DNA of 36,743 nt from Octopus bimaculoides (lineage: Eukaryota). Position numbers and translations under genes: made by a program. The notes under the pieces were generated by a model. It saw only the letters and a program-made list of their open reading frames with translations, made no database searches and was not told the DNA's origin. The stretch lies in assembly GCF_001194135.2 (NCBI RefSeq), contig NC_068986.1:40696957-40733699 (forward strand), written 5' to 3'. This document shows, one piece after another, positions 197-36,578 of this stretch (position 1 is the stretch's first letter; the number at the start of each line of letters is the position of its first letter).

Positions 197-294
197 ATGA
201 TGAAGCTAAGCCTATAGAAGAAAAAATGAACAAAATGGGACCTGGAGAAGCATATTATATCAACTGTAATTTACGTGATGAAGCACAAATCAAA
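197..294 (+). CDS. HSD17B14: copy A exon 3 (98 nt) [32 protein letters not shown]
   Basis: tttcag acceptor, gtaagg donor; 97/98 identical to copy B exon 3. Confidence 0.92.
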
Positions 295-1946
295 GTAAGG
301 GAGAATAATGTTTTATGAGCTGATGAAAGACTACCACATGCACGGAACATTAAAAGCCTAAAATAGGATATATAGAGAAGGAGAAAATATTATCTTGTTT
401 CAGTCATTTCACTGTAGCCAAGCTGGGGCACTGCATTGAAAGGTTTAGTTGAACAAATTGCCTCCAGAACATATTTTTTGTAAGTTGGGTGCTTATCCCA
501 GCAGTGTCTTTTACCGGATCGCTAAGTTGCGGGGGATGTATTTACAACAACACTGGTTATGAAGCTGTGCTATGGAATACACACACACACGCACGCACAC
601 ATGCACGCACGTGCGCGCGCATGCATGGGTGCTAGTATAGTATGCTGTCTACCACGGTATCAAGCTATCTACTTTATCTTTCAGCTATTTCAGAGATAAA
701 ACACTTCGTGCATTATAAAGGAATTACACAAATAAGAAATATTGAATCTTATATTATTTCGTTGGCACGTCGGGGGTTCCAGTTGATCCAATCAACGGAA
801 CAGCCTGCTCGTGAAATTAACGTGCAAGTGGCTGAGCACTCCACAGACACGTGTACCCTTAACGTAGTTCTCGGGGATATTCAGCGTGACACAGTGTGAC
901 AAGGCTGACCCTTTGAATTACAGGCACAACAGAAACAGGAAGTAAGAGTGAGAGAAAGTTGTGGTGGAAGAGTACAGCAGGGTTCGCCACCATCCCCTGC
1001 CGGAGCCTCGTGGAGCTTTCAGGTGTTTTCGCTCAATAAACACTCACAACGCCCAGTCTGGGAATCGAAACTGTGATCCTGTGACCGCGAGTCCGCTGCC
1101 CTAAGCAGTGGGCCATTGCGCCGCCACAATCTACCTTATCTTTCAACTATTTCAGAAATAAAACACTTCGTACATTATAAAGTAATTACACAAATAAGAA
1201 ATATTGAATCTTATATTATTTTATATGATAAAGAAATTACACAGATAAATCAAGACAATCCATTTTAACGATAAACACTTCTTATGTCATTAAGGAACAA
1301 TACAAATAAATCATGTGTGTCTTTCCTCATAAGGTAGATAACCCTGGCTGTACTGTTTGACACCGTAGTAGACCGCTGCTGTATACTAGCACCCATGCAT
1401 GCATGCGTGTTATGGGCTTCTTTCGGAATCTGTCTACTAAAATCACTCATAAAGCTAGGGTTGACGCAGGACTATTGTAGAAGCCATTTGACCAAAGTGC
1501 TGTGCAGTGGGATTGAACCCAAAACTACATGTTTGAGAAGCAAGCTTCTTAACCACACACCCACACCTGCACCTAGATGATTTTTTCTTTCTTTTTCTGG
1601 CATGGAAGGGAGAGAACTCCTTTCATGATTGAGCAATGTGAATGGGTAAACATACACAAATATTTTTTTTTATTGACATAAGAAAAGAGATTTGTCTGCA
1701 AATTAAATGAATTTTAGAAGCTATGATAAATGACAGTGAAGAGGCTAAAACACCTAATAGAGGACATCACAGATAAAAGCCAAACCATATAACAATTGGA
1801 TCCAAAGCAGAAAGACAAACTTGCCTGGAATATCCCAGAGCATAAAACTACCTGCAGTGTTGCTGAGTAAGAGACCTGAAGTAAAATTAATTTGCTATCA
1901 CTGGTGTAAATTCCTTTTGGACAGTTGAAGCAGGGAAAGAAACACG

Positions 1947-2804: not shown

Positions 2805-5800
2805 ATGTATGTATGTATATATATAGGTATTTATATTATGGTTTAATATTCTTGATCTTTTCTCTCTTGCCAGAACATGATTGAAAAGGTGGTTGAGAAG
2901 TATGGCACCATAGACTGTTTAATCAACAATGCTGGCTACCGTAAGTTAACATCACTCTTAGACTTTTTTTTTCCAAATTATTTATATTACAAACCAATAA
3001 GGGTGCCTCTATGAGGTCTCATGACTTACGAGAAAGAGCAGACAATTCTTTGATTACATCTTGTTACCACCAGTCATCACATTTTGACAACTTCTTGTTG
3101 CCACAGTAATAACATCTTGAAGTATTTTTCACTGTAATATTGGGATACCAAATGATTTATAACAAATGGATTTTTTTTCCAGATCCAGGATGTGCTGCCA
3201 TTGAAGATGTTACAGTTGAAAGCTTTAATAAGCTTCTTCAAGTAAATTTAATTGCTGTATTCCTTACATGCAAGGTGATTTTCCTCATTACTTAATTTCT
3301 GTATTCTTCTCTTATAAATCATCGTTATTGTTTCATTTCTTTACATCCTGTCTTAATTTTTCTATGTTAAATACCTTCCGCTATAAGCAAACAGCGTTAT
3401 CTTTTTTATTTATTTATTTTTCACAACACTCATTGGAAATCCATTGTACACATCCATGCCAGTGCATTCATTTTTCCTGGGGACATTAACAGATGCTTTT
3501 AGTGTCCTGTCACACTCACAGCTCAATTATACATTGCCTTTCATGAAAATTAACACTTCTCTATCAATGCACTCTATGACCATGTCTCATTACCAAACAT
3601 CATCATAGTTTTTATGAATGATCTATAGGGTTTATTTTTCTTACATACAGAGATATCTTCTGCTGGCAACAGAAGAAACAACTCCCAAGATTTCAACTTT
3701 TTTCTTACTCTATATAACTCACTTTAACACTCATTAGATCTACAGAACATAAACTACCAGGAACTATCGCATGAGTCGTTTTAGAAGTGTTAGCAGTTCA
3801 TGGACTTCATTCATGGAATTTTCCCTACTGCCAATGACACCTGTACATCTATGAAATCTGAAGACTTCTCTGGAAACACCCATGAAGAATTGTTGACCTT
3901 TCTGAGAGAGTATGGTTGATTGCAATAAATTGATTTCTGTCCCCTTAAAAGCATTTAACAGTTCTCCTAGTTTTGTAACCATACTTAAACTATATCATGT
4001 AATACATTTATCAAAAACAATGCAACTATAAGATTCAAGAACAAAAAGGAGTTCATAGTTGATGTATTTATGAATGATGAATTCAATATTTTCAATATAC
4101 TCGATTACAGGCCCACAATGCAATGCAAATACTATTAATCAAGCAGAAACAAACTGTTTTCCAGCTTGCCAGCCCTGATCAAACCATCCAACCCATGCCA
4201 GCATGGAAAATAGGCATTGAATAATGACGAAGATACATCTGACTCCGTGTGTGTGTGTGTGTATCTTGTTTCTGTCATCAGACTGCAGCCATGCTGGAGC
4301 ACCTTCTTGAAGAGTTTAGTTGAGCAAATTGAGTACGTTACTTATTTTTTTAAAGTTGGTACCTATTCTACCAGTCACTTTTCCAAACTGCTAAGTTATG
4401 AGAATATAAACAAACCGATACCAGTTATCAAGTAGTGCTGATGGACAAACATACATGTATGTGTGTGTGCGTGTGTCCACACACATGATGGACTTCTTTC
4501 AGTTTCCATCTATCAAATCCACTCACAAGGCTTTGGTTCACCCAGAGCCTAAGACTACGGTAGAAGACACTTACCCATGTCACACAGTTGGATTGAACGT
4601 GGAATCCTACGGTTGAGAAGCAAACTTCTTACCACAGAGCCACAGCCGTGCCCATATCAATTTTAGAACCTTATTGATTTTGCATCAGAGGAGTCTACAT
4701 TACTTAACCAATCCTTTGTTAATTCCAAATCCCTTAGTTTACTTTTTTTAACAAAACTCATTACATATTTCTCTACACTTATATCATAAACATTTTCAGT
4801 TTTCTGTGTTTTCTAGCCTTATATAGATCTGATTTTTTAAACTTTTTTTTCTTATTTCTTATTTAGTATGCCCTTCCCCACATACGCCTTGCCAAAGGTA
4901 ACATCATTAATATTGCTAGTGTGGTGTCTTACCTTGGCCAGAAAGACTCCATCCCTTATACAGCATCAAAAGTAAGTAGTGTCATATATTTTATTTTTTA
5001 TTCTTCTTCAAAAATCGAATACAGACACAATACTGTCTTTCCAGGCATTTATAAACCAGAACCTCTAAATAATCACATTATAATTCTGCTTGTCTTTCTG
5101 TTAGAAAGTTAGCATATGCATTATGCTCTTTACTTTTGCTACTGCTTTTGCTTGGATCAAGTTACCGTATGAGTTATTGGTAAAGACCTATCAATCCACG
5201 ACTTAAATAGAGAGTTGTGTAATGAACTTTAAGGAAAATTTTATTTTGTAACTTATTGCATTTGTGAATCATTAGTTTGCTCATGTTTTATATTGGTAGT
5301 TTTGCGTGGATGACTATAATGGATTATTATATACCACATATATTTCTGTGCTGTATATTTAGTTTAGCATATCTGTACCATATATTCATATTTACTTTAG
5401 AATTGTATGAGGAGTGTGTCCAAGTGAATGTATATATTTGTTTATATAAGAAAATCATATATATAAATTATTGCATTCATATTTGATAAACCAAGTCAAT
5501 TGTTGCTTTTCATTTGATCCTCTCTGATCATAAACAGTTGATAATGACAGGGGTGATGCTTGAATAGAAATCGGTCTAGTGAAACAATTTTTCACCAAGA
5601 GACTACTGCAGGAAGTGTTGTAGAGGTTGTCTACTCCATGAAATATCCAAGGCTCCAGCTAGGCCATTCTAATTTACAAGAAGGAACTTTAAATTCTTGC
5701 AACCACCAGACTAGTTCCCTGATACCTTGCAAAGTACACTATAAATGAACTCGTTGTATTTACACTAATGTACAAGAGTCTGTATTTCATTTAATTATGT

Positions 5801-8800
5801 GTGGACCAAAGTGACCACCCATGATTCAGAAAAGTCTGTAACCTGAAAAGGCTTTGGAACCAAAGGTTCCTGAAAATGGATATCGTATCTACATTTATCA
5901 AATCATACTACGTTTTTGATAAGCTCCACATTAATACTAACCAAGTAAACCTATGATAAAAACCATTCCAGCCATGACCATTCTGCCTTTCTTTAAGGTT
6001 TAAAGGAGTCTGACATTACATTCTCTTATGTATCCTTATCTTCAAACAGTAGTGTGGAATATGAGAGGTTTAGCTGCTCATTCTAACAGCTTTAGTGATC
6101 ATATAGAAACTCCCCCATTGGCTCAGCCACTAATAAATATGTACCAGTTTATTTTTAGCATATTTTCCAGTTTCATTCTTATATTGAGAATACAACAAGC
6201 CTTCCATATTGGTCACTCAACCTGCAAGAAATACCAGCCAAATTTCCTTCTTGAAAGAATGATATATTGGAAAATATATTTGATACACAAAATAGTAATG
6301 GTCCCTCCATTTCTATAAGTAATTTGTGAGTTTGGGTTGCTCTTTTTAGCAGGTCAATCAACCGTACTGGATCATTTGATCAACAATGTATTATTCTACT
6401 GCTGTATTAATATAAGCAATACAAAATTTATCAACGAGTTCAGAATTGATAAAATAATTTCATATTACCTATTTTTTTCTGTTTTGTAAAACATTACATT
6501 CTTAATGACTTCCTACTTCACTCATTGTCACCTGATGTATTTGCCATGTATATGTATGTACACCTTGGCCTGTGACTGAACTCAATATACCATTATTTCA
6601 AGCAGTTTTCATACTCTTATCAGCTTTATTATATCCTCATACTCTAGATCAGACTATCTCAGTCATATCAACTTTGTGACACAATGAAAGTCAAATAAGA
6701 AATTAAGGTCAAATTTTGAATAGAAACTTTGTCATTCTTTAACATGTTTATCATTTATATTTTGCTGGCAGGGTGCTGTTGCAAGCATGTCAAAGGCATT
6801 GGCTATCAGTGAAGCTAAACATGGTGTTCGAGTGAATACGTGAGTAAAATTCTCTCTAAATATGAAACCCATTTCTGCAATTGTTGCTTCTTAGAGACAT
6901 TAGCAAACTTTTTGAGAGGTACCACTGAAAATTTGGCTTCAATCTAATAATAGTAATAATGGGTTTATTTATACGGTGCTCAGGTGTTCTACAGCTCATC
7001 AAAAAATGGTAGAAGAGTGGACAAAAAGCAGCAATAAGTCCAGTAAGAAAGGCAGCAATGAGAACCAAAAGTGCATCCATAGAAAAGCGGATAAAAACTA
7101 CAAGAAGTACAGAAAATCAAGCAGTAAAAGTGTCATAAACAGTGTATAAGCATTTCAGGAGTATTGTTGGCAAATTTCTGGAATCATGGAATTTTTTAGA
7201 GATGCTCTGTTTTGACAGCTAATATGAGTACATTATTCCGTGCTTTAATAATTCTGAGCAAGAAAAAACTGTTTCTATAAGCCATGAGTGCTACTCTGCT
7301 TTTTGGTTTTATAAGCTTGTTTATGGGTAGTAAAGTTAAAAAATTGGATAAAGATGGTGGTAATCTTATGAGCTTCTACAGAGTCACTTGCAAGATGTTG
7401 AAACTTTAGTGTGTCAATACCCAGAGAAGCAAGATGTTCAAGATATGATAAGGGGCTGACAGAGGGTATTTGTCTGGTTATACATCTCTGGACAGCTTCT
7501 AGTAGAATGATATTCTGGACACGATGTCAATTATGGACAAGTGATGCAAACTATAAGTGTGGATGTACTCAAATCATATATAGGTTTAAATAAATAGCAA
7601 ATGAGCAGCTGACAAAGGTCTTACTCGGTGATGCTATGATATCTTCAGCCTTTTTGATTATTTTGGAAATGTAGTTTATCTAACAAATTGTTATTGACAA
7701 ACATACCTAAATTATGTTCAGTAGCAGACCATAGCAATGCAACATGTGCAATTAACTACTGCATATCAGAATATGCTGTATGTCCTCAGTCTGACAGAAG
7801 TATGATACAACTGGAAAAGCAGATCACACAATGTCATTCGACTGTTTATATGCATACCATAAATCTGCTCAATAAAAACTGACTTGCAGTGCTGTCTTAA
7901 GGTATGGACAAGCAGGGTAGTTATCCAGGAGCGCCCATGACACTGGGGTCTAATGCTACTTTATGTTGTAGTTTGTTGTCAATAACTACAATGACCATAG
8001 TTCATTGCTTTGCTTACAGACCCATAATACAGTCAAGATGTCCCTGATGACCTAAGTTTTTGGTAATTAAACAGTCTCATTATAAAATATGAATTGTTTA
8101 CATTAGTGTTTCCCAGCCTATTTTTTCCCCAGGCTCCACTTATTGTAGATGCCAGTACATTCATTTCTCCTGGGGACATGTTGTGGCTTGCTGTCAATAA
8201 ATACAATGACCATAGTGCATTACTTTGCTTGCAGACCCATAATGCAGTTAAGATGTCCTAGATGACCTAAGTTACAGAATAACTAATTGAATTGTACAAA
8301 CTTTATATCAAGCATTTACAATTATCTGAAATTTGGTGACACATTTGAAGTATGTTGAATTTCCTCGAAACTAAAATAGAATCCAGTAGCCATACGTTCT
8401 AATAATGGTAGTGAATAAAAAGACCACTTATCTCATACACAAAAAGAAAAAAAATTACTCTTAAGTAGCTACATGCAAGTCTTTTTCTAGTATCTTAATG
8501 ATCCAGTTCACTGAATGCAATACTTTGGAGACAAAACCTACAGTTGCTTCTAGAGTAAATATGTATGAGGTTGTGCTGAAAAGTTCCTGGCTTTGGATAA
8601 AAAAAATACAAGAGGGTCAGTTAATTAGGATTTTATTAAACATATTCCCATCTCAGATTCATATGCCTGTTGTAGCAGTGCTTCAGTTTTTCTAAGCCTT
8701 GTAAAAGAACTCAGAAGGTTGGGTCTCTAACCAGGCCTTTCACGAAATCCTTAAAGCCAGGAACTTTTCAGCACTACCTCATAACTATTTTCATTTGAGA

Positions 8801-11800
8801 TAAAATAAAAGTAAGGGTGTTATTGAAGTATTGTAAAGATATATAAATAGTTAATTTAAATATTCAAAGGCATATATATCATTATCATCATCATCGTCGT
8901 CGTTTAACATCTGCTTTCCATGCTAGCATGGGTTGGACGATTTGACTGAGGACTGGTGAAACCAAATAGCTACACCAGGCTCCAATCTGATTTGGCAGAG
9001 TTTCTACAGCTGGATGCCCTTCCTAACGCCAACCACTCAGAGAGTGTAGTGGGTGCTTTTATGTGCCACCGGCATGAAGGCCAGTCAGGCGGTACTGGCA
9101 ACGGCCACGCTCAAAATGGTGTATTTTATGTGTCACCTGCACATAAAATACACCGTATATATATATATATATNNNNNNNNNNNNNNNNNNNNNNNNNNNN
9201 NNNNNNNNNNNNNNNNNNNNNNNNNNNNNNNNNNNNNNNNNNNNNNNNNNNNNNNNNNNNNNNNNNNNNNNNNNNNNNNNNNNNNNNNNNNNNNNNNNNN
9301 TATATATATAGGCATATACATGTGAGTGTAATAAGAAATTGGCTTCTCAATCACATGGTTCCTGTTTCTGTCCCACAACATAGCACCTTGTACAAGTATC
9401 TTCTATTATACTTACAGGCCGACAAAAAACTTGTGAGAGGATTTGATTGACAGAAACTGGAAGAAGCCCATCATATATATAAATATATGCCTGTATCTAT
9501 GTGTGTGTGCCTTTGTGTTTGTCCGTTACCACTGCTTGACAACTAATGTTGGTTTGTTTACATCCTCGTAACATAGCAATTCAGTGTAAGAGACTGATAA
9601 AATAAATACTAGGCTTTAAAATTAGATACTGGGATTGATTCCTTTGACTAAAACCCTTCAAGGCGGTGCCCCAAAAGATCCACACTGAATGACTGAAACA
9701 AGAATAAGTTAAGATATATATGGCTGATGTAGGCAACCCTTCCTTCTGTCTATCACAAAAACAACCAACAAGTGGAATGACCCAATGGTACTATGAGGTT
9801 AAAGTAGGTCCACATGACAAGATATACAATAGTTCATTGATGTTAGGAGTGGGGAGAAGAGAACAGTTTGTAATGAATTGGTGCTCTTGCCTGTGTGTCT
9901 GAAATTGCTTCTTCCTTGCACATGTTACAAAGTTAATGCTGGTTGTTGTACAACAAAGATCAGAGATGTGGCTTACAATGACTTAGGAAAATACTTTCAA
10001 AATTTTTTGTCTTTTTAGAATTTCTCCTGGAGCCATATGGACACCTCTGTGGGAAGAAGTAATGTCCAAGGCAGAGAATCCAGAAGAATTTTACAATGAT
10101 GGAGTGTCTTACCAGGTGAGAAATATTTCACAAATGTGTTTGGCTGTAAGGTTATGAAACATCTTTCCCAATCTCTTGATTTAGAGTTCAGCCTTTCCAT
10201 ATGGTACATTGGGGAAGTGTTTTCTCTTAAATTCCCAGACCAACTAAAGCTTTGTGAATGGATTTGGCAAACAGAAACTGAAAGAAGCTCATCATGTGTG
10301 TATGTTTGTATCTCCTTGACATTGCATGATAGTTATAAACGCTGCTCACACAGTAGCACACAGTATTGACTTATAAAAAACGTTTAATATACTTTATAGT
10401 ATACGCCATATGTAAACAAACAAGTTTGTTTTTCGAAGCGCCGAAATGTATGGTAGAACAAGTAGAAAGATAAATTTTATTCAACGCATAGATACTGAAC
10501 AGTATCAATATAAAGGATAAAATTCTTTTTTCGTTTTAAAAGCAGAAAAATTTGTCGGCAGCTAGCCATGATGACCGGACTCACATCCCTCTAATATCCG
10601 GTTAGAATGTTTTACCATTTAAGCTAAACCGCCTGACCGCCAAATTCTTCTGCAATTTAAGAAGATATAGAATCATCTAGGAATGCTAGATGTCGTATAG
10701 GTTACGCCATATGTAAACAAACAAGTTTGTTTTTACATCCCGACAAGTCATTAATAAATGATTTTCAATGCCATACAAGCTGTATTATGCATTTCCAATG
10801 TTATGTGAGAGCATGTCTGACCATGGGATGATATCACCCTGCTTGGAAATAGGTGAGGGTTAGTGACAGGAAGGGCACCCAGCTGTAAAAAATCTGATGA
10901 GATTGGTGCCATTAATGTCCCTCTCAGACTTTGTTGCAAGTCAACACCTGCAGAAAAGAACAGAGCAAGGAGGAAGGTCCAAAGAGCTGATGCATGGGAA
11001 GGAAGAACTGCATGTAGTAGTTAACATGAGACTTCCTGGCATATGGATGCAACAGTAAGTGATGAAATTAAAGAGGTGAGCAAGTCAAGAATCCCTGAGT
11101 GGAAATGGCATGAGCCCAGCCAGCACTGAGCAGCAGTGAACATTATAGATGAGTTCAAAAAGCAGTGGAAAAACCATGATGATGATAGTAAAGCTCACTT
11201 TGCAACCATGTGGTTTCAGGTTTAGTCCCACTGCATGGCACTATGAGCAAGTGTCTTCTACTACAGCCCAAAGAAGACCAATACCTTCTGACTATTGGTA
11301 TTGGTTTATTTACATCTCTGCAACTTTAAAAATATGTACTGCAATTGATATGTTTAACCATGGGATACCTCTTACTCCATTCTCTTTTGTGTGTGGTTTG
11401 TTTGTACAAACGGTAAAGCTATAATCCTCTCCTGAATACTTTATTGATGTTTCATAACTGTAAAATAGACAAAATTGAAATAAACAAACAAAAGATATCT
11501 TTATTGTATGGAAACTATATTGACAAGGACACATTATGTGAGGGACCCTGATGTTAGTGTGTGTAACATACATAGATAGACACACATGTATATAAATACA
11601 TATATTATGCCCCCTAGCGTCTGTTACTACCACCATTTCTGACATTGATTTAATGATGTTTGCACAAGTGTGTAAATATTCTCTAGCACTGCTTGTTGCC
11701 AATTATCTCAGTCCTTTGTTATCTCCTCTATGAGGATCAGCATCCAGAGTTCAGTCTTCTTGGGTCTCCATTTCCACAGATTTCAACTTTGAATACTTTT

Positions 11801-14876: not shown

Positions 14877-15042
14877 GGAACTCAGAATAATGGAGAACAA
14901 AATGAAAAGAAGGAAAAGGAAAATAAATTTATGCTGTTAGATAATTGATATTTTCCAAATTTGGGATTAATATTTTTCTACAATAACTTGAATAATTTTT
15001 GAAAATATATCATATTTGCTTGTAATTTAAAGTGTTTTCAAG

Positions 15043-18497: not shown

Positions 18498-18544
<47 letters not shown>

Positions 18545-21823: not shown

Positions 21824-24285
21824 TCATTATTTAAGACGTCACACAGTATCCAATATCATGATGTTGTTGACTGAAGATGTGCCTAGCAGGGGTCTGTACT
21901 GTCTGTCAAGTCACAACAAGGACCTCAGACAGACAGTACTTTATGCAATATGCATGCAATTCCAAGTAATGCTGATTTTTGCAATACACCTATATTGTAA
22001 GTATCTCTAAAGTTTCCAGATGTTTTTTCAGCTTGGGTGGTATTGAACTTAATGTTCTAATGACAACAGAGACAACCTTTATGTTTGACTCTTGTAGCTG
22101 CCACACATTAGTGATCTCAATTCTCAGGTTTTCATATTTATCAGTCTTTCCTCTTTCTTTCATGATGAAATGTTGATGTCCTGGCACTGCCGTCAATTAT
22201 TAGGCACTCCTGTTTGTTGCTCCTAAAGGCTACTATATTTGGCCTTTGGTGCTCTAACACCTTGTCTGTCTGGAAGTCAAAGTCCCAGAGGATTTTTGCC
22301 TTCCCTTTTTCATCCATTACCTTTTCCAGTGTACTTTGGTATGAAGCACCCATTACCTTGTATCCATACTTGCGGCATAGTAGCCAGTGAAGGTTTTGGG
22401 CTATCTTGTCATGTCTGTGCTTGTACTCTTTCTGTGCAAGACTTTCACAAGCACTAACAATGTGAGTCACGCTTCCAACCCTCTTCCCACACATTTTTTA
22501 GAGGTTTGTTGCACTTCTGTGGTATATATCCCTTTTCACTGAGTTGGTATTCAATGCCTGGTCCTGGGCAGCGGTGATTAGGCTTTCAGTTTTCTTTTTT
22601 AGGTCACATTTGTTGAACCACCTCCATGATACTTCCTGGTCTTTTAATTTGTTAGTTTCACTGTGGAACTGACCATGTAATTCCATGCGGAGTAAGGTTT
22701 CTTCTCTCTCGTTGGCTGTTCATGATCAGAATTCATGAGCATTCTCAAGTTATCTTTGGTAATTCCTTCAGCATTAGCAGCATACTGTAGCAAGTCTTGT
22801 TTGCTGTTTACCAAATATTCTACCATGTTTCTTCTTTCACTGTTGATGCACTCCCATATGCTAATCAGTTCACATCCACCTTTATCCCTCTTCCTGTAGA
22901 GCCTGTGTACAATCGCCTTAGGGTGGAGGGCAATATGCATTGTCATTGTCTTTCAGGTAGTGCGATCGAGTTGGTTAATCTCCACTTGTGTCCATTTCAA
23001 GATGGGTACACTGTAGCAGACTACAGCAACAGTTCATATGTTGATGGCAGTCACAAGGTTCCTTGAGTTTAGTTTTGATTTCAAGAGAAGTTTGAGGCAC
23101 TTCAAATATGCAGTGATGACCTTGTCTTTCATTTCTCTGAGCAAGATATTGTCCAGTTCCAGGATCCCAAGGTACTTGTACCCATCATCATCTGGGTCTT
23201 CCATTCTCTCTCCATTTGGCAATTCTATGCCCTTATTGAAGCCAAATTTTGTTTGCTGCCTCTCAAAAAGGTTGGTTAGAGAGCTAAGAAGCAACAATTG
23301 CAATAATCGGTTTCATATTTGGAAAGAATTTTACTCACGTATTCACTCGAACACCATGTTTAGCTTCACTGATAGCCAACGTCTTTGACATGCTTGCAAC
23401 AGCACCCTACCAACAAAACATAAATGATAAATATGTGAAAGAATGGTAATGGTTTACATATTACACAACATCTTCAGTGCTGCTTTTTTATATTCTCAAT
23501 GTTTTCCCCTAAATTTTAAGTATTTTTTTCTATATATTTTGTGCTGTTTGTATATTTTTCTATATTTTCTCTAAGTGTTGCAGTGCATTTGTGCCTTGTA
23601 ATGGATATCTAGATGTGTAATGGATTTTTAAAACTATAATTCAAGGTTTTAGAAAATCAATACTTGTGCATGAACCTCTTGAAAAACATGTTATATATTT
23701 TTTTAATATTGAAGTTTAATTAATTAAACAAGGTAACCAATAGCTTTCTATATTTTCCTATCTGTTAACTTTAGAACACTCTTTATTAAACTTTCTCTTC
23801 AAAATGTGACATTAATTTTTTTAATTGTTTTTCAGGTGTCACAAAGTTGATACGATTGAGATAGTCTGATCTAGAGTATGCGGATATAATAAAGTCAATA
23901 AAAGTATGGAAACTGAGTTCAGTCACAGGCCAAGGTGTACATACATATACATGACAAAAATGTCAGTTGACAATAAAATGAGTCTGAAGTGGGGATGATT
24001 GACCTTCTAGAAAGAGCAACCAACACTCACAAATTACCCATAGAAATGGAGGGGCTATTACCAGCAGAATTGTTAACACACTGGACAAAATGCTAAGCAG
24101 TATTTCTTCCAGTTTTCCATGTTCTGAGTTCAAATTCCAACAAGGTCAACTTTGCTTTCATCCTTTTAGGATCAATAATATAAGTACCAGTTGTGCACTA
24201 GGGTTGATGTAATCGATGTTCCCCCACTCCCCTGAAATTGCTGGCCTTGTGCCAAAATTTGATTCCAATATTAATATATTTTATG

Positions 24286-27300: not shown

Positions 27301-30300
27301 TGCATGTGTGTGCATGCGCACAAAACACACATTCAAAAGTCATATAATTATGTGTGTCATTGAGATGTGGCAAAGAGTGAAAAAGGAATTGTTTGATGCT
27401 GTTGATATTGTATGAAGCGTAGTGTAGTTACATAAGAAAAATTAGTTTTGCTTGTATTTTGTTTTTGTCAATTCAGACCATACCATGAAGTCAGTGGGTT
27501 GCTGCATTTTTGTAATATGGCTTGGAAATAAAGGCACTTTCTTTGAATCTATCTGCACCTTCCAACCATTAGCAACCAGCAGAAGTCTGGGTATTGATAT
27601 TCCTTTGCTTATTCTCTTGTATTGTCTTTTCTCACTCTCCTTCTACAAAATAAGAGTTTGCAAATTTTTGTGAGGATCTTCATTACATTGCATTTCTTTT
27701 TCTGCCAGCAAAAATATGCAAGACTTCATTATGGTGCTAGGTATATTCTTCTTAAGCCCTTTGCTCCCTATCAAGGATAGGGCTTTTTTTTTCCTGCTCT
27801 TGACTCTGGGCTGTCTTATCAATTTCTTACCTTTCCTAGGTTTTCTTGGCTTTGAATTGTCATTGATGCTTCTGTAACTCTGCTTGTTTCCTGGTAGAGG
27901 TATTGGCCTTATGCAAACACTCTGAGAACAGGTGGTTCATATTAGTCTGGCCTCTATCCTTTGATCTGCCCAGCATAGGAGGCCCTACCAAGAATGATGA
28001 ATGTATTGGCATGGACATGTGTGATGGATCTCCAATGAATGTTGTAGAAAAAAAGGGAATGCCATTTGCTTATAGTGGAAGGTATATAACATAGAAAAAT
28101 TAAGACATGATGGAAAGAAATGATTATAACAATAACAATGATTTATAAGAGAAGAATAAATGAGGTAATGAGGAAACTAACCTTGCATGTGAGGAACACA
28201 GCAATTAAATTTACTTGAAGAAGTTCATTAAAGCATTCAACTGTAACATCTTCAATGACAGCATATCCTGGATCTGAAAAAAAAATTACTCGCTAAAAAT
28301 CATTCACTATACCAGTGGTTCCCAAACTTTTTAGAGACGCGGCCCACTATTTATGACACCAGTTTATGGCGACCCACTTAACTCTACTGGGTAAAAACAT
28401 TAATGAAAGAAACAAATTTATTTCAGATTACATTTTCATTGAGGCCTGTGAGAAGGCCTCATTTATATTAAATGTGAAAAAAAAAATGTTTTATAACTGT
28501 TTCAATGTCTCCATACCCTATGGGCAGGTATTAACTCTAATACAAAACCTCGAAGCAGTAACTGTTATCGGCTCGATCAGTGTTGTACTGCGCCTAGTTA
28601 AAGTTCTTTATAAATAGGTAAAAACAGACTTTTCCTTTTTACGATTACATATGAATAAATAACTTGAGAAAATGACCACCTCTGATTTGTTAAGTTCGTG
28701 AAAAAAGCCTACTGCTTGATAAAACAACCAGTCTGGTATTGAAAACATGAGTCTTGAACTATCTCGATAGACAGCAGTTAATCAAAGCTAATGCGTAATT
28801 TTATAACTTTTTGCGACTCACTAGGATTCCATTTGCGACCCATCAGTGGGTCGCGACTCATAGTTTGGGAACCACTGCACTATACCAATATTACAGTGAA
28901 AAATATTTCAAGATGTTATTACCATGGTAACAAAGAGTGTTAAGATGTCATGACTTTGGTGATAACAAAATGTAATCAAACATTGTCTGCTCTTTCTTAT
29001 AAGTCATGCAGCCTCATAGAGACACCCTCATTGGTTTGTTATATAAATAATTTTTTAAAAAAAATGTCTAGGAGTGATATTAACTTACGGTAGCCAGCAT
29101 TGTTGATTAAACAGTCTATGGTGCCGTACTTCTCAACCACCTTATCAATCATGTTCTGGCAAAAGAGAAAAGGTGAAGAATATTAAACCATGATACAAAT
29201 ACCTACACAAACACATACACACACTGCCTGAACAGCAAGTTTGATAAGATGATGATGACATATATATGTGTGTTTGTGTGTGTGTGTGTGTGTGTGTATT
29301 TATATATATATATAAATACACACATATATACTTACAATATATAGGTAGGTATATATTAATTTAAGTGTACAGTATTACATATCCATTATAGCCGGTCTTA
29401 CCTTTCGGTTTTGCATTAGTGGGTTCAACAGAGTGTTAGGTAACAATCTGATCAATGGCTACTTCTGATGGGCACAGGGTTACATAATTGGGCTGTTACC
29501 TAACACTCCACAGAACCCTAGTGTGAAACCGATTGGTAAGATTGGCTGTAACGGATATATAATACTATTCACTTTGATTAATATACCTGTTCTACTGACA
29601 GTTATACAGGGGTTGGACAAAATAATGGAAACACCTAGCATCATAGCATCATAATTTTGAAATATCTATAAAACCGTCAAAAGCTTGTTTATTTTTATGT
29701 TTTTTGATTTATTATTAGTGTTGCTTAATATATTTTGCTAAAATTGCTGTTTCTTTTCAGATATCATCAGAAAAAGGTAATTAAAATTCATTAAAATGAC
29801 AGATCTATTGGACTTTCAAAGAGGTCAAATTGTTGGTGCTCGTATGGCAGGTGCTAGCGTAACAAAAACAGCCGAAATGTTTGGTGTATCAAGAAGTACT
29901 GTCTCGAAAGTAATGACAGCCTTTGAGAAAGAGGGAAAAACCTCCTCNNNNNNNNNNNNNNNNNNNNNNNNNNNNNNNNNNNNNNNNNNNNNNNNNNNNN
30001 NNNNNNNNNNNNNNNNNNNNNNNNNNNNNNNNNNNNNNNNNNNNNNNNNNNNNNNNNNNNNNNNNNNNNNNNNNNNNNNNNNNNNNNNNNNNNNNNNNNN
30101 NNNNNNNNNNNNNNNNNNNNNNNNNNNNNNNNNNNNNNNNNTACAGCTCCCAAAATTACTGCAGAGCTTCATGACGACCTCGAGAACCCCGTTTCCACAA
30201 AAACTGTTTGCCCGGAGCTGCACAAAGCCAAATTTCATAGGAGTGCTGCAATCAGAAAACCACTACTTTCAAAAAAAAAATGTTGCAAAGCATTTAAAGT

Positions 30301-33300
30301 GGAGTAAAAACCTACAGAATTGGTCACTAGAGCAATGGAAGAATGTTATTTTCTTGGACAAGTCATCCTTTACCTTATTTCCAACCACCAGCCGAGTATA
30401 CGTGTGTAGACAGCCAAAAGAAGCATTTGACCCAGACTGCCTTCTTCCAGCTGTTAAACATGGAGGAGGATCTGCGATGATCTGGGAGGGCTATATCTTG
30501 GAAATCTGCCAGCTCAATGATTTCCCTTCATGGCAGAATTAATAGTCAAGACTATTTAAGCATTTTATCTGATCAAATTCAAATTCAAGGTGTTATACCC
30601 AATAACTGGTATAGCAGTATCTCTGTCAACAGCTCCAAGAACAAAAGAAATGCACTTCAGAGAGACAACTATAGAAGCATCAAATTGTTGTACTAGGTTA
30701 TGAAAGAGTCATTTAGAAACTGACTATGCTTAGATAAGATTGACTTTGGGCCAATGCCATCTTCCTAGTGAAACAATAGCAAGAGAATTACTTTGCTAGG
30801 TTTAAGTCCCCGATGTTATTGTTGTTGTTGTTGATGATGATGATGATGATGATAATTCATTAATCTAGAGAAGACCTTATGAAATATAAAGCATTATACT
30901 TCCTTACTTTGATTTGTGCTTCATCACGTAAATTACAGTTGATATAATATGCTTCTCCAGGTCCCATTTGGTTCATTTTTTCTTCTATAGGCTTAGCTTC
31001 ATCATCTGAAATAGAATTTTTTGTTAAAAAGAAACAAAAATCAACTCAAAATATATTTATGTATATTTTGATTTAAAACTTTATCATTAAAGTATACAAA
31101 AGTATAAGAAAAACAAATTAAAAAAGTTGTTCAATAAATTCTATCACATTTGCTGAATTTTGTTTGTAAAATAGAATATAATATATTGATATAATTTCAA
31201 CAACATTTACACACATACACACCACCACCTATGTGTATAATTACGTGTTTGTGTATGTATATATATATTTATTGATATTTTTAGAAATGAAGAAAATTTC
31301 AAATGCAGGAGAATAGTTGTGAAAACAGCTTTAGAAAATCTGGTAAGAATACACCTATAGACAGGGTAAAAGTGGCCAACAGCCACTACCGACAATTGAA
31401 TTCTGTACTGCATAAATTCTATTTGAGCCCTCTGTACCATTGAGCTGAATGATCCATGATAACAGATACTGTCTTTTATAATGCTAAATAAGTATCTTTT
31501 GGAATGTGAGAACATTCCAGAAGGTGTATTTTTAACCAATTTCCTAAAGCTGTTTTCACAGCTAGTCTCCTGCATTCAAAGTTTTCTTTATCTCTTAAAG
31601 TACCAATTCACCCTTTGCTTCAATGTTTGTTTATAAAAATATTCTCATATTTGTTGATAATTTACACAACAGGCATATATATTCCTTTCTGCTATTGGCA
31701 CAAGGCCTGAAATTTTGGAGGAGGGGGGCTAGTCAGTTACATCAACTCCAGTGCCTAGCTGGTATTTATTTTATTACCCTCGAAAGGAGTAAAAGGCAAA
31801 GTCAACCTCTATGGAATTTGGACTTAGAAGGTAAAGACAGAGGAAATGCTGCTAAGCATTTTGCTCGATGTCCTAAAGATGCTGCCTGATCACTGTATTG
31901 TAACGCAGGAGATGTATTAACTCATTGCCTCCCATAATTCTATTAACTGGAATTTTTTTTATGAAACTTTGATTTCTAGCATAAAACAGCCTTAGAAACA
32001 TGCTGGAATGATCAAAATAACATTTTAAATAGAAATAAGCGAGATATTGGGTGAAAAATTAGCAAATCTCATTTGAATATCAGAGAAATATACCTAGTAG
32101 ATATAGCAAAAAGGTCAGATATGTGTAAATATTGACAGATAATTATGAAATTTGTAATTTTTAAATGATCTCATATGAGATCACTTAACACTATACTTTG
32201 TTGAGGTCATAAAAATTTATGAACATTCCAGAGGATGTAGAAGAATTATTTTTTGAAACTGGATCATGATGTACATATAAGACTATTAATAACAGCATGT
32301 TGAAAACCCCCTTTTGGATAGACAGAGTCAAAGGCCACCATTGGGATTTGGACGTACATCTCCTGTAGACATGACAGACATTCTTCTTGTCAAAATGATC
32401 CTTTGAAATTTTCTATCCAGTTTAGTAATTTTAATCAAAGCGATCTGTTGAAAGTCTTCTTGTATCAAAGTGATCCTTTGAAATTCTCTGTCCGATTTAG
32501 TAATTTTATTCTCACCAATAAGAATTGTATGTTGTTGAGGTCATAAGATTTATAGACATTCAAGAAAATGTGGAGTAATTCCTTTTTGAAATTGGATTTC
32601 AAACTTTGGTACAAGGCCACCAATTTTGGCACAAGGCTGCATTTGAACTCAGAATATAAAAACATTTTGCCTGGTGTGCTAACAATTCTGCCAGCTTGCC
32701 ACCTTTATAAAGCTATTAATATTGGCTTGTAAAAATTTGGTTGAAAAACTGCTTTGGAAAGAAAAATTATAAGCCATACCATGGATGTCACAAAAGGCAA
32801 CTTTTGAACCATTTTTTACTGCAAGAAAAAAAAAAGAAAAGAGAGTTATGAAAATATCATACTAGCTTAAATAACAGAAAATGGTTAATAATTAGAGTAA
32901 ATATTTCCCATGTTCATTAAGTTTTTTTGTTAATTGAAATACCTGACATGAAGGTATCCTAGTTTACTTTGTTTCACTGCTCTGTCATTCAACATAATTT
33001 CAATTGAATAAAAGCCTTCAAGGAATATACAGATATTTCCAGGATGGAAACCCAAGCAAAACTAAAGAACCCTTATTTACATTATTTACATTTGACGGAT
33101 ATTTGTCCTCATCTTGTTTGTTGGTAATACAACATTTCGGCTGATATACCCTCCAGCCTTCATAGGGTGTCTTGGGGAAATTTCAAACTTGGGTTCTCAT
33201 TCCTAAGGTATTTTTCGATGTTATCATTATTATTATTATTATATTATTATTCAGGTCACTGCCTGGAATCGAACTCGGAATCTTGGGGTTAGTAGCCTAT

Positions 33301-36300: not shown

Positions 36301-36578
36301 CTTGTTTTTACAAAAAACTATAGAGAGCAATGAAAGAGAAGAGAAATCCAAGCTTCCGAATTTTTGCAATACTCAACACGCTAAAGTTTTGAGATAAATA
36401 GATAGAGTGAGAAAGGGAGAGAGATAGATAGATAGATAGAGAGAGAGAGATGATGATGAAGAAGAAATTAATTTAAACAAATACAGTTACCGAATGTTTC
36501 AACACATCCTTTCCCAATTCCACGAGCACCACCAGTGATAATGACAACTTTGTCCTTATATCGGAGAGACGAGGCCAT
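19735..36578 (-). CDS. HSD17B14: HSD17B14-like short-chain dehydrogenase/reductase, copy B (complete, 9 exons, 267 aa)
   Basis: complement(join(19735-19884,21139-21235,23339-23406,25311-25415,28182-28273,29089-29155,30908-31005,32780-32818,36491-36578)) = 804 nt. All introns GT-AG. Starts [22 protein letters not shown] (TGxxxGIG) and has an acidic Asp40 at the end of beta2, the established NAD(H)-preference signature. Also NNAG, Ser146, Tyr159 and Lys163. Confidence 0.95.
20498..20734 (+). mobile_element. Mariner 5'-end fragment
   Basis: TA followed by TGAGAAGGTACCCAAAAGT (TIR-like); ATG at 20693 gives [14 protein letters not shown], resembling a mariner N-terminus. Confidence 0.5.
21139..21235 (-). 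CDS. HSD17B14: copy B exon 8 (97 nt) [32 protein letters not shown]
   Basis: Mirror of 10019-10115; 14 nt differences, 9 amino-acid changes. Visible in ORF track entry 20983..21282. Confidence 0.94.
21790..23234 (-). mobile_element. 5'-truncated, decayed R4/Dong-like non-LTR retrotransposon (restriction-like endonuclease type)
   Basis: Frameshifted ORF pieces: [15 protein letters not shown] (RT end), [23 protein letters not shown] (zinc knuckle), RHDK, ILWDF..TD..HQRPNIV..CLIID (endonuclease), LQKSALLG. Stop at about 21925; (TAA)n tail at 21790-21832. Confidence 0.88.
23339..23406 (-). CDS. HSD17B14: copy B exon 7 (68 nt) [23 protein letters not shown]
   Basis: Mirror of 6772-6839; GCA>ACG (A>T172). 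Confidence 0.95.
25311..25415 (-). CDS. HSD17B14: copy B exon 6 (105 nt) [35 protein letters not shown]
   Basis: Mirror of 4867-4971; 2 amino-acid changes, 2 synonymous. Confidence 0.95.
25612..25790 (+). mobile_element. SINE family 1, 5' half
   Basis: GGCTGTGTGGTAAGAAGTTTG head; matches 17355 onward. Confidence 0.75.
25795..26935 (+). mobile_element. Decayed mariner (DD34D) transposon with right TIR
   Basis: [19 protein letters not shown] start (25834), [31 protein letters not shown], with stops and frameshifts; ends GGGATGACCCAG-TA. Left TIR not seen. Confidence 0.92.
28182..28273 (-). CDS. HSD17B14: copy B exon 5 (92 nt) [31 protein letters not shown]
   Basis: Mirror of 3183-3274; 4 amino-acid changes, 2 synonymous; gttagt donor. 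Confidence 0.93.
28313..28877. mobile_element. hAT (Charlie-like) non-autonomous element, 565 bp
   Basis: Perfect 16-bp TIR CAGTGGTTCCCAAACT; perfect 8-bp TSD CACTATAC (28305-28312, 28878-28885); absent from the copy A intron. Confidence 0.95.
29089..29155 (-). CDS. HSD17B14: copy B exon 4 (67 nt)
   Basis: Mirror of 2874-2940; E>D79 plus one synonymous change. Confidence 0.95.
29607..30580 (+). mobile_element. Tc1-like transposon, 3'-truncated
   Basis: TA + CAGGGGTTGGACAAAATAATGGAAACACC left end; [55 protein letters not shown]; gap at 29948-30141. Confidence 0.9.
30585..30800 (+). mobile_element. RTE-like LINE reverse transcriptase fragment
   Basis: [21 protein letters not shown] and AIFLVKQ*QENY resemble RT domains 0-2. 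Confidence 0.7.
30908..31005 (-). CDS. HSD17B14: copy B exon 3 (98 nt)
   Basis: Mirror of 197-294; one change (K>Q55). Confidence 0.93.
31680..31890 (+). repeat. Abundant interspersed repeat (GGCACAAGGCCTGAAATTTT family)
   Basis: Further copies at about 15404-15540, 15815-15935, 19125-19205, 24080-24265, 32600-32705, 33345-33510 and 33765-34640. Class not determined. Confidence 0.75.
32780..32818 (-). CDS. HSD17B14: copy B exon 2 (39 nt) [13 protein letters not shown]
   Basis: Long polypyrimidine tract + ttgcag acceptor, gtatgg donor; phase 1/1 bridges exons 1 and 3 exactly. Confidence 0.92.
33075..33320 (-). mobile_element. tRNA-derived SINE (family 4) with internal (AAT)n
   Basis: Minus-strand head GCATAGTGGTTAAGAGC...GTTCGATTCC (A and B boxes). 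Confidence 0.7.
33814..34501. mobile_element. Foldback-like TIR element with 8-bp TSD
   Basis: 29-bp TIR GGATC(C/T)TTGGGGTTTGAC(G/A)GGCAACATTT; TSD GGCTAGTC (33806-33813, 34502-34509); inner arms 33962-34083 and 34239-34360 differ at 1 of 122; central gap. Confidence 0.88.
34838..35140. mobile_element. Left part of a sibling of the 33814 element
   Basis: Starts GGATCTT; about 34866-35025 matches 33843-34002; interrupts a family-2 SINE. Confidence 0.7.
36491..36578 (-). CDS. HSD17B14: copy B exon 1 (88 nt) [29 protein letters not shown]
   Basis: ATG at 36578-36576; gtaact donor; glycine-rich Rossmann motif. Confidence 0.94.

What the first reader, a model, noticed from the sequence alone, without database searches (positions are those of the whole stretch)
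197..36578. Tail-to-tail inverted duplication giving two intact HSD17B14 genes
Seen: seven exons mirrored with identical lengths (98, 67, 92, 105, 68, 97, 150 nt), about 95% nt identity, no stops or frameshifts, intact splice sites, and stops 4.86 kb apart. 3' flank homology continues to about 15395 and 19210. Intron TE content differs completely, so both frames stayed open through multiple insertions, which suggests both are functional. HSD17B14 is single-copy in human as far as I recall. Caveat: the relative orientation spans the N-gap at 18626-18709.
Basis: partly seen in the sequence, partly recalled or inferred. Interest (0 to 1): 0.72.

Follow-up and report, generated by a model that had tools for sequence, protein, structure and literature searches.

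The report
Inverted pair of octopus HSD17B14 genes
Two tail-to-tail copies of a short-chain dehydrogenase gene (HSD17B14 type) in the Octopus bimaculoides genome are real, old paralogs that Octopus vulgaris also carries; this is an ordinary, already annotated gene-family expansion, and the one notable feature is that the exons, but not the introns, have been kept alike by gene conversion.

Summary
Seven exons of 98, 67, 92, 105, 68, 97 and 150 nt are mirrored. They share 644/677 nt (95.1%), have AG/GT at every splice junction and no stop codons, and the two stops lie 4,858 nt apart.

The window is Octopus bimaculoides CM046606.1. Both copies are already RefSeq genes. Copy B (minus strand) is complete: 9 exons, 267 aa, identical to XP_014781126.1. 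Copy A has exons 3-9 in the window and exon 2 about 5.2 kb upstream, beyond a 4,773-N gap. Exon 1, which carries the [10 protein letters not shown] cofactor motif, is not in the assembly. The sequence matching O. vulgaris copy A stops at the edge of a 100-N gap.

A gap-free O. vulgaris locus has the same order, C→ B→ ←A, with three intact 267-aa genes. Non-coding DNA is about 89% identical between orthologs and about 80% between paralogs. The duplication therefore predates the species split and is neither a haplotig nor a scaffolding artefact.

Between paralogs, synonymous sites are far more alike than introns. Exons show site patterns O=9, S=8; intron flanks show O=320, S=2. This points to exon-restricted gene conversion.

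Five of the six N gaps are bracketed by colinear O. vulgaris sequence. At the spacer gap, a 1.5-kb segment is inverted relative to O. vulgaris.

Low interest.

The parts
197..294 (+). Copy A exon 3 (98 nt). Exons 1-2 lie upstream of the window.
   Evidence: AG/GT boundaries and 97/98 nt identical to copy B. Matches XP_052824417.1.
2874..2940 (+). Copy A exon 4 (67 nt, NNAG motif).
   Evidence: 65/67 identical to B.
3183..3274 (+). Copy A exon 5 (92 nt).
   Evidence: 85/92 identical to B.
4867..4971 (+). Copy A exon 6 (105 nt; catalytic Ser and the Y-x-x-x-K motif).
   Evidence: 101/105 identical to B. Aligned to human Ser141/Tyr154/Lys158.
6772..6839 (+). Copy A exon 7 (68 nt).
   Evidence: 66/68 identical to B.
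10019..10115 (+). Copy A exon 8 (97 nt; predicted substrate-loop region). It is the most diverged exon and carries the A-specific signature EEVM.
   Evidence: 83/97 identical to B. The signature is shared with O. vulgaris A.
14727..14876 (+). Copy A exon 9 with stop codon (150 nt).
   Evidence: 147/150 identical to B. Four 'species-pattern' sites.
14877..15463 (+). Copy A 3' flank that is still homologous to the copy B 3' flank (the outer end of the duplicated arm). The distal part is SINE-like.
   Evidence: 14660-15463 matches 19951-19140 at 82%.
15464..19139 (.). Spacer between the inverted arms. It contains the N gap 18626-18709. It also contains a segment, 17036-18522, that is inverted relative to O. 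vulgaris, and a multi-copy element at 17357-17727 with a target-site duplication.
19140..19734 (-). Copy B 3' flank homologous to the copy A 3' flank.
19735..19884 (-). Copy B exon 9 with stop codon.
21139..21235 (-). Copy B exon 8 (B-specific signature AELKRN).
23339..23406 (-). Copy B exon 7.
25311..25415 (-). Copy B exon 6.
28182..28273 (-). Copy B exon 5.
29089..29155 (-). Copy B exon 4.
30908..31005 (-). Copy B exon 3.
32780..32818 (-). Copy B exon 2 (39 nt, [13 protein letters not shown]).
   Evidence: AG/GT boundaries.
36491..36578 (-). Copy B exon 1 coding part (ATG at 36578; [10 protein letters not shown] cofactor motif).
   Evidence: The nine exons together translate to XP_014781126.1 (267 aa) exactly.

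Best explanation
The window holds two true paralogs of an HSD17B14-type classical short-chain dehydrogenase in Octopus bimaculoides. They are arranged tail to tail as an inverted duplication. The shared arms run from roughly 80 nt upstream of the ATG (seen in O. vulgaris and in copy B) to about 590 nt past the stop, and a spacer of about 3.7 kb lies between them.

The pair belongs to a three-gene cluster, C→ B→ ←A. On the proteins sampled here, the cluster formed after the split from the Argonauta lineage and before the O. bimaculoides / O. vulgaris split. Both members have been retained in both species as 9-exon genes encoding 267 aa. The one unverified piece is exon 1 of O. bimaculoides copy A.

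Since the duplication, the introns have diverged freely and gained different insertions. The coding exons have been repeatedly homogenised by short-tract gene conversion between the inverted copies. That is why the exons look about 95% identical while the introns are about 80% identical.

Exon 8 has escaped homogenisation most. By analogy with other SDRs it should encode the substrate-binding loop, and it carries paralog-specific residues conserved in both species. This is the best hint of functional divergence.

The proteins keep the SDR catalytic Ser-Tyr-Lys, the NNAG motif and (in copy B and both O. vulgaris copies) the TGxxxGxG motif. They are most likely NAD+-dependent oxidoreductases. 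Following the mammalian ortholog, they may be L-fucose or other sugar dehydrogenases rather than steroid dehydrogenases.

Shown here: anatomy, orthology, synteny, the age of the duplication relative to the species split, and the contrast between exons and introns. Inferred: gene conversion as the mechanism, enzymatic activity, and the function of both copies.
For: Anatomy and identity:
- Mirrored exons with intact splice sites and open frames.
- Copy B equals XP_014781126.1, and copy A exons 2-9 equal XP_052824417.1 residues 53-290.
- The best solved structure is human HSD17B14 at E=7e-61, against 1e-36 for the next family. The alignment shows Ser141/Tyr154/Lys158 conserved.
- Pfam adh_short and adh_short_C2 match.

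Evidence that the duplication is real and old:
- The O. vulgaris OX597819.1 stretch (108 kb, 0 N) has C(+), B(+) and A(-), each with 9 AG/GT exons and 267 aa. The B and A stops are 6.1 kb apart.
- Colinear non-coding identity is 89.5% for ObA-OvA over 11.8 kb and 89.3% for ObB-OvB over 11.0 kb. It is 80.1% for ObA-ObB and 77.6% for OvA-OvB over about 3.5-4.2 kb.
- The window is colinear with O. vulgaris A and B across five of the six N gaps.
- In a neighbour-joining protein tree, the A+B clade, the C pair and the six Octopus genes versus Argonauta each have 100% bootstrap support.

Evidence for gene conversion:
- Fourfold-degenerate sites differ between paralogs at 5/98 and 9/115. Alignable non-coding DNA differs at p=0.163 and 0.168 (Fisher p=0.002 and 0.01).
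- Orthologs show no such gap: 8/97 and 5/116 against 0.075 and 0.071.
- Site patterns in exons 2-9 are orthology 9, species 8, cross 1. In the ±150-nt intron flanks they are 320, 2 and 5 (Fisher p=2.6e-10).
- Species-pattern sites outnumber cross-pattern sites 8 to 1 (p=0.02).
- Five species-pattern sites cluster in the last ~25 nt of the coding sequence and the first bases of the 3' UTR.

Evidence for constraint:
- dN/dS is 0.47 for ObA-OvA (p=0.046) and 0.37 for ObB-OvB (p=0.006).
- dN to the outgroup C is equal for A (0.142) and B (0.140).
- Paralog-specific residues 198-203 (EEVM.. versus AELKRN) are conserved in both species.

Function of the mammalian ortholog: human HSD17B14 is an L-fucose dehydrogenase, 359-fold more efficient on L-fucose than on estradiol (PMC11293516).
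Against: - Exon 1 of O. bimaculoides copy A was not found anywhere in the 17.9 kb upstream. The RefSeq protein for A therefore lacks the cofactor-binding glycine motif, so A could be truncated in this species.
- dN/dS of 0.4-0.6 is only moderate constraint, and the A-lineage test is borderline (p=0.046).
- Gene conversion could keep A open without selection acting on A.
- No expression data could be consulted.
- The exons are short (39-150 nt) and flanked by diverged introns, which makes them poor substrates for classical conversion. The mechanism is inferred from patterns and was not observed.
- The orientation of A and B across the 84-N gap is not read through in this assembly. The spacer differs from O. 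vulgaris by a 1.5-kb inversion, so the local assembly of the spacer is not fully trustworthy.
- Only one Argonauta protein was available for dating.
Confidence: 0.8

Rival explanations
1. Assembly artefact: the two copies are uncollapsed haplotypes, or a contig was placed twice or misoriented by scaffolding across the N gaps, so there is really one gene.
For: The assembly is gap-rich: six N runs in the window, and a 4,773-N gap immediately upstream of it. The junction between the copies crosses an unread gap. The spacer contains a segment that is inverted relative to O. vulgaris.
Against: The copies differ at 16-20% of alignable non-coding positions and share only about 3.5 kb of about 11-15 kb of intron. 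That is far beyond allelic variation. Each copy has its own ortholog at about 89% identity in a gap-free O. vulgaris sequence with the same tail-to-tail order and the same upstream neighbour C. A single O. bimaculoides contig (9301-18625) links the 3' end of A to spacer DNA that lies next to the 3' end of B in O. vulgaris.
Confidence: 0.02
2. Copy A is a 5'-truncated or otherwise dead gene in O. bimaculoides. Its downstream exons look intact only because gene conversion from the functional copy B keeps overwriting them.
For: Exon 1 is absent from the assembled upstream sequence. The contig just before the 100-N gap ends in a CT microsatellite preceded by sequence unlike exon 1. The RefSeq model has to borrow an N-terminus from antisense intron-like DNA. 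Exon-biased conversion is demonstrated. ObA exon 9 is 3 nt from ObB but 13 nt from OvA.
Against: Homology to intron 1 of O. vulgaris A (89%) and to intron 1 of copy B runs right up to the edge of the 100-N gap. The expected position of exon 1, about 760 nt further on in O. vulgaris, falls in unsequenced gaps. Exon 2 is intact with AG/GT. The O. vulgaris A ortholog is complete. A-specific residues in exon 8 are conserved in both species and have not been overwritten by B. dN to outgroup C is not elevated in A.
Confidence: 0.12
3. No gene conversion took place. The high exon identity reflects purifying selection alone on two old paralogs, including constraint on synonymous sites in short exons.
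For: High identity stops within about 20 nt of the exon borders, as selection on coding and splice signals would predict. dN/dS is below 1.
Against: In orthologs, fourfold sites diverge as fast as introns, so synonymous sites are not constrained. In paralogs they are 2-3 times less diverged than introns. Exons have 8 species-pattern sites against 1 cross-pattern site and only 9 orthology sites, while the flanks have 320 orthology sites. The protein tree cannot recover A-A orthology, with 11% bootstrap support.
Confidence: 0.1
4. Independent, recent duplications occurred in each species, which would explain why some coding sites group by species.
For: There are eight species-pattern coding sites. 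O. vulgaris A and B differ at 1/88 nt in exon 1. The C-terminal tails are species-specific: SKSEVTPS in O. bimaculoides and SKNEVALS in O. vulgaris.
Against: Introns and flanks group overwhelmingly by ortholog (320 sites to 2). About 11-12 kb is colinear between orthologs against about 3.5 kb between paralogs. The arm endpoints, gene order and orientation are the same in both species.
Confidence: 0.02

Closest known systems
Human HSD17B14 (DHRS10; PDB 1YDE, 5HS6 and others), now identified as L-fucose dehydrogenase
   Same: It is the best solved-structure match, at E about 1e-60 and about 50% identity over residues 54-258. Ser141/Tyr154/Lys158, NNAG and the PG motif are conserved. Animal proteins named HSD17B14 or L-fucose dehydrogenase dominate the homolog list. 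The length is about the same (267 versus 270 aa).
   Different: I recall the gene as single-copy in human; this was not tested here. The octopus has a cluster of three genes. Substrate preference is untested in any mollusc. The region encoded by exon 8 differs between the octopus paralogs and from human.
RefSeq/GenBank gene models XP_014781126.1, XP_052824417.1 and XP_014781128.1 (O. bimaculoides); CAI9724549.1 and CAI9724548.1 (O. vulgaris)
   Same: These are the same genes. B matches its model at 100%, and A exons 2-9 match at 100%.
   Different: The model for A has a spurious N-terminus. The O. vulgaris 485-aa model fuses C with B, skipping C exon 9 and B exon 1, although both exons exist in the DNA.
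Inverted paralog pairs and palindromes with arm-to-arm gene conversion (for example the Drosophila Hsp70 inverted pair and primate Y-chromosome palindromes; recalled from memory, not tested here)
   Same: Two arms lie in inverted orientation around a short spacer. The paralogs are more alike than their age predicts. The spacer orientation differs between related species.
   Different: Here homogenisation is confined to short exons, and the arms as a whole are only about 80% identical. In Y palindromes the whole arms stay above 99.9% identical. The arms here are interrupted by different insertions.

Membership tests
Classical short-chain dehydrogenase/reductase (SDR; Pfam adh_short / adh_short_C2) | The domain matches above the Pfam gathering score over the full profile. 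| tested here: met
   P0001 (B): PF00106 at 175.7 bits over profile positions 1-192 of 195, and PF13561 at 188.5 bits. P0002 (the model of A): PF00106 at 147.8 bits, covering only positions 19-192.
Classical short-chain dehydrogenase/reductase (SDR) | N-terminal glycine-rich cofactor motif TGxxxGxG. | tested here: inconclusive
   Present in copy B ([10 protein letters not shown], exon 1 at 36578-36491) and in all three O. vulgaris genes. Not found for O. bimaculoides copy A, whose exon 1 is expected in unsequenced gaps.
Classical short-chain dehydrogenase/reductase (SDR) | Catalytic Ser, the Tyr-x-x-x-Lys motif, and the NNAG motif. | tested here: met
   Both copies have NNAG (exon 4), IAS and YTASK (exon 6). 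These align to human Ser141, Tyr154 and Lys158.
HSD17B14 orthology group | Closest relatives across animals are HSD17B14, clearly separated from other SDR families. | tested here: met
   The PDB search gives nine HSD17B14 sequences at E about 1e-59 to 1e-61, and the next family at 1e-36. The protein search gives animal hits named HSD17B14 or L-fucose dehydrogenase at 45-55% identity. No formal reciprocal search or tree against other HSD17B or DHRS families was made.
HSD17B14 orthology group | Enzymatic activity: NAD+-dependent oxidation of L-fucose, with weak 17-beta-steroid oxidation. | not testable with these tools
   The activity is known only for the mammalian enzymes (PMC11293516). The bacterial L-fucose dehydrogenase model NF052481 scores 161 bits, below its cut-off of 300.
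Inverted (tail-to-tail) segmental duplication | Two colinear homologous arms on opposite strands, beyond what chance would give. | tested here: met
   Thirteen colinear minus-strand blocks run from 38-316/31168-30886 to 14660-15463/19951-19140, with E-values down to 0.0.
Inverted (tail-to-tail) segmental duplication | The orientation is read through without gaps. | tested here: inconclusive
   The O. bimaculoides junction crosses the N gap 18626-18709. The same arrangement is read without any N in O. vulgaris. The spacer is not colinear between the two species.
Concerted evolution by gene conversion | Paralogs within a species are more alike than expected from the age of the duplication, with gene-tree conflict between segments. 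| tested here: met
   Fourfold sites versus introns. Site patterns in exons versus flanks, Fisher p=2.6e-10. Exon 9: ObA-ObB differ at 3 nt and ObA-OvA at 13 nt. No dedicated tract-detection program was run.

The most novel reading that the evidence does not exclude
The inverted pair may be a small, recombinationally active palindrome. In this reading, conversion is targeted to all coding exons except the substrate-loop exon, where selection keeps two specificities apart, for example two different sugar or steroid substrates. The spacer would flip between species as a by-product. A more exotic variant is that exon-only homogenisation is templated by spliced RNA or cDNA in short patches. That variant would explain the sharp exon borders, but it predicts intron loss, which is not seen.
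Probability: 0.12. Interest if true: 0.5.

Novelty: new member of a known kind. Interest (0 to 1): 0.25.

Why it matters
This finding has little weight on its own. Lineage-specific duplication of a metabolic SDR gene is common, and both genes are already in RefSeq.

It has three modest uses:
- It corrects two public gene models. The O. bimaculoides copy A model has a spurious N-terminus, and one O. vulgaris model fuses genes C and B.
- It gives a clean, small example of exon-restricted concerted evolution in an inverted gene pair in a cephalopod, with one exon escaping homogenisation.
- Mammalian HSD17B14 has been re-identified as L-fucose dehydrogenase. A three-gene octopus cluster with a variable substrate loop is therefore a reasonable place to ask what these enzymes oxidise in molluscs. 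It also warns against reading the 'HSD17B14' label as evidence of steroid metabolism in octopus.

Tried and rejected
- I looked for exon 1 of copy A in 17.9 kb upstream. I used tblastn with three proteins, blastn with the copy B 5' region, and a 35-nt pattern allowing 3 mismatches. None found it.
- A weak tblastn hit in intron 8 of copy A (11224-11364, 32% identity, E=0.004) translates to nothing SDR-like. I judged it a chance match.
- The repeat finder pair I3 (33958-34160 / 34162-34364, '98% complementary') is mostly N paired with N across the gap. A real but weaker foldback (33808-34083 / 34507-34239, 78%) surrounds it.
- NCBIfam is a bacterial library and gave no family above its cut-off.
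- Literature: no paper holds both 'HSD17B14' and 'Octopus bimaculoides'. Two other searches timed out.
- One tree script was lost and rerun.
- I first misread L002.fa as holding a single record. It also holds L003 and L004, and I redid the affected comparison with separate databases.
- My first two placements of exon 2 were off by one or two bases. I fixed them from the AG/GT signals.
- I ran no further search on finding a transcript of copy A. The first search and the cluster listing showed no transcript-derived octopus member.
Full report
**1. What is in the window**

The window has 36,743 nt, 36% G+C and six N runs. A self-comparison on the minus strand gives 13 colinear blocks. They run from 38-316 / 31168-30886 to 14660-15463 / 19951-19140, at 78-89% identity.

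Inside these blocks lie seven exon pairs with identical lengths: 98, 67, 92, 105, 68, 97 and 150 nt. Every acceptor is AG and every donor is GT. There are no stops or frameshifts. Per-exon identity is 99, 97, 92, 96, 97, 86 and 98%, giving 644/677 nt and 205/225 aa overall. The stop codons end at 14876 and begin at 19735, so they are 4,858 nt apart.

Three small corrections apply. The 3' arm homology reaches 15463/19140. About 3.5 kb of intron and flank is still alignable between the copies. Copy B also has exon 1 (36578-36491) and exon 2 (32818-32780) in the window.

**2. Source and annotation**

A protein search identifies the source as Octopus bimaculoides chromosome CM046606.1. Both genes are already annotated. 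Copy B is identical to XP_014781126.1 (267 aa). Copy A is XP_052824417.1 (290 aa).

The best solved structure is human HSD17B14, at E=7e-61. The next SDR family scores 1e-36. Human Ser141, Tyr154 and Lys158 align to conserved residues in the octopus proteins. Pfam gives adh_short and adh_short_C2.

Human HSD17B14 has been shown to be an L-fucose dehydrogenase. It is 359-fold more efficient on L-fucose than on estradiol (PMC11293516). The name should therefore not be read as evidence of steroid metabolism.

**3. The 5' end of copy A**

I fetched the region upstream of the window as L001, where window position = L001 position − 22,693. The window starts immediately after a 4,773-N gap.

Exon 2 of copy A lies at L001 17487-17525 with AG/GT boundaries. 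Exon 1 was not found by any method.

Homology to intron 1 of the O. vulgaris A ortholog (89%; L001 16904-17741 against L002 10849-11666) runs exactly to the edge of a 100-N gap at L001 16804-16903. The weaker homology to intron 1 of copy B stops at the same edge. In O. vulgaris, exon 1 lies about 760 nt beyond that point. In O. bimaculoides it is therefore expected inside the gaps at L001 16122-16347 or 16804-16903.

The first 52 residues of the RefSeq model come from L001 10957-11121. That stretch is the antisense of an intron-8-like sequence, and a sister copy sits in the window at 13290-13148. The model consequently lacks the glycine-rich cofactor motif. 'Intact' is thus shown for exons 2-9 of copy A but remains open for exon 1.

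**4. Independent test in a second species**

I joined two overlapping O. vulgaris loci (OX597819.1) into 108,070 nt with no N. This stretch carries three complete genes, each with 9 exons and 267 aa:
- C on the plus strand (exon 1 at 12177, exon 9 at 49548-49697).
- B on the plus strand (57003-73209).
- A on the minus strand (98070-79309).

B and A lie tail to tail with their stops 6.1 kb apart. In O. bimaculoides the third gene (XP_014781128.1) lies 13.9 kb upstream of B on the same strand. The order C→ B→ ←A is therefore conserved.

Colinear non-coding identity is 89.5% for ObA-OvA (11.8 kb) and 89.3% for ObB-OvB (11.0 kb). For all four A-B comparisons it is 78-80% over only 3.5-4.2 kb. The duplication thus predates the split of the two species. 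This excludes haplotigs, a doubly placed contig, and independent recent duplications.

A neighbour-joining protein tree puts all six Octopus genes together, apart from the single Argonauta protein, with 100% bootstrap support. A+B and the C pair each also have 100% support.

**5. The N gaps**

The gaps at 2017-2543 and 9173-9300 lie in introns of A. The gaps at 29948-30141, 34084-34236 and 35176-35634 lie in introns of B. Each is bracketed by sequence that is colinear with the O. vulgaris ortholog, and no exon lies in the matching O. vulgaris intervals.

The gap at 18626-18709 lies in the spacer. There, window 17036-18522 matches O. vulgaris 74140-75238 in the opposite orientation to its surroundings. 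This segment sits on the same contig as exon 9 of copy A. It carries a multi-copy element of about 370 nt with a target-site duplication (ATGAATT), so it does not look like a simple chimera. It is either a real inversion of the spacer between the inverted arms or a local misassembly. In either case, one O. bimaculoides contig links the 3' end of A to DNA that lies next to the 3' end of B in O. vulgaris.

**6. How the pair evolves**

By the Nei-Gojobori method, ObA-ObB gives dS=0.085, dN=0.044 and ω=0.51. ObA-OvA gives ω=0.47 and ObB-OvB gives ω=0.37. In both ortholog pairs non-synonymous change is significantly rarer than synonymous change (p=0.046 and 0.006). dN to gene C is the same for A and B.

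The notable point is that paralog dS (0.085-0.087) is no larger than ortholog dS (0.089-0.101), even though the introns say the paralogs are more than twice as old. Fourfold sites differ at 5/98 and 9/115 between paralogs, against 16.3% and 16.8% in alignable non-coding DNA (Fisher p=0.002 and 0.01). Orthologs show no such difference.

I classified variable sites among the four genes. 'Orthology' sites group A with A and B with B. 'Species' sites group the two copies within each species. 'Cross' sites group ObA with OvB. Exons 2-9 have 9 orthology, 8 species and 1 cross site. The ±150-nt intron flanks have 320, 2 and 5 (Fisher p=2.6e-10). Some flank alignments include non-homologous insertions, which inflates the count of 320. 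The BLAST-aligned blocks give the same direction.

Five species-pattern sites cluster in the last ~25 nt of the coding sequence and the first bases of the 3' UTR. In O. vulgaris, exon 1 differs between A and B at 1/88 nt, but differs from O. bimaculoides B at 8-9/88 nt.

The simplest explanation is repeated short-tract gene conversion confined to the exons. The introns, broken up by different insertions, have diverged too far to take part.

Exon 8 is the least homogenised, with 14/97 differences and 4 orthology sites. It carries paralog-specific residues conserved in both species: 198-203 EEVM(S/N)(K/N) in A and AELKRN in B. From what is generally known of SDR structures, this stretch after the PG motif belongs to the substrate-binding loop. 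Divergence in substrate preference is therefore a reasonable inference, but it is untested.

**7. Verdict**

It is also ordinary: an old, already annotated, lineage-specific expansion of a metabolic SDR gene.

This analysis adds four things:
- The pair is part of a conserved three-gene cluster.
- The 95% exon identity reflects concerted evolution rather than youth.
- The intactness of O. bimaculoides copy A cannot be shown, because exon 1 falls in assembly gaps.
- Two public gene models are wrong.

The argument 'open frames despite intron turnover imply function' is weakened by the evidence for conversion. The conserved A-specific residues and the intact O. vulgaris ortholog still favour two working genes.

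Noticed in passing
Outside the window: L004 10001-43340 (CM046606.1 40747455-40780794, minus strand), 13.9 kb beyond window position 36578: A third HSD17B14-type gene, C (XP_014781128.1), has 9 exons and 267 aa and is about 74% identical to B. It lies upstream of B on the same strand. O. vulgaris has the same neighbour, so the locus is a three-gene cluster, C→ B→ ←A.
   Followed up: yes
Outside the window: L001 9160-11541 (exon-9-like part at L001 10070-9927, minus strand): A lone exon-9-like fragment (VMGHMGTPSDIG...[18 protein letters not shown], with SGG changed to SEE) sits inside a 2.4-kb inverted copy of an A-type 3' end, about 7 kb upstream of copy A exon 2. No other exons accompany it. 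No counterpart was found within 10 kb beyond O. vulgaris A. It is probably a pseudogene fragment.
   Followed up: partly
Window 13290-13148 (minus strand) and L001 10957-11121: The N-terminal 52 residues of the RefSeq protein for copy A (XP_052824417.1) are encoded by L001 10957-11121. That stretch is the antisense of intron-8-like DNA inside the fragment described above. The window holds an 83-86% similar copy in intron 8 of copy A. This 5' end of the model is most likely a prediction artefact caused by exon 1 lying in a gap.
   Followed up: partly
O. vulgaris locus, L003 10001-73209: The O. vulgaris protein CAI9724548.1 (485 aa) is a fusion model of C exons 1-8 with B exons 2-9. The skipped exons, C exon 9 (49548-49697) and B exon 1 (57003-57090), are both present and intact in the DNA.
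   Followed up: yes
Window 17036-18522: This spacer segment is inverted relative to O. vulgaris (74140-75238). It may be a real flip of the spacer between the inverted arms or a local misassembly next to the N gap at 18626-18709.
   Followed up: partly
Window 17357-17727: A multi-copy element of about 370 nt is inserted in the spacer and flanked by the direct repeat ATGAATT. It is absent at that site in O. vulgaris. Many 85-95% similar copies occur across both species' loci.
   Followed up: partly
Window 33808-34507: A foldback (arms 33808-34083 and 34507-34239, 78% complementary) surrounds the N gap 34084-34236 in intron 1 of copy B. The whole ~690 nt is absent from the O. vulgaris ortholog. 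It is either a foldback-type insertion or an assembly artefact.
   Followed up: no
Window ~15300-15490 and ~19140-19300: The outer ends of the two arms lie inside a SINE-like element that has many copies in the locus, for example at 33340-33510. A repeat may therefore have been involved in the original inverted duplication, or it may simply have been part of the duplicated unit.
   Followed up: no
Window 36579-36743 and O. vulgaris upstream regions: Similarity between A and B upstream of the ATG reaches only about 80 nt: a shared 5' UTR and a GGGTGGAGC...TTTCACAAA box. A CCAAT-like box conserved in both B orthologs is missing in O. vulgaris A. The paralogs may be regulated differently.
   Followed up: partly
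Window 32780-32818: RefSeq isoform X2 of copy B (XP_014781127.1, 254 aa) skips the 39-nt exon 2 in frame. This removes [13 protein letters not shown], part of the dinucleotide-binding fold.
   Followed up: no
Window 18875-19116; 1942-2016; 18483-18542; 36704-36743: There is a 123-nt unit repeated twice next to the 3' flank of copy B. Dinucleotide microsatellites, (AC)n and (TA)n, sit at or near contig ends and the window end, which is typical of assembly break points.
   Followed up: no
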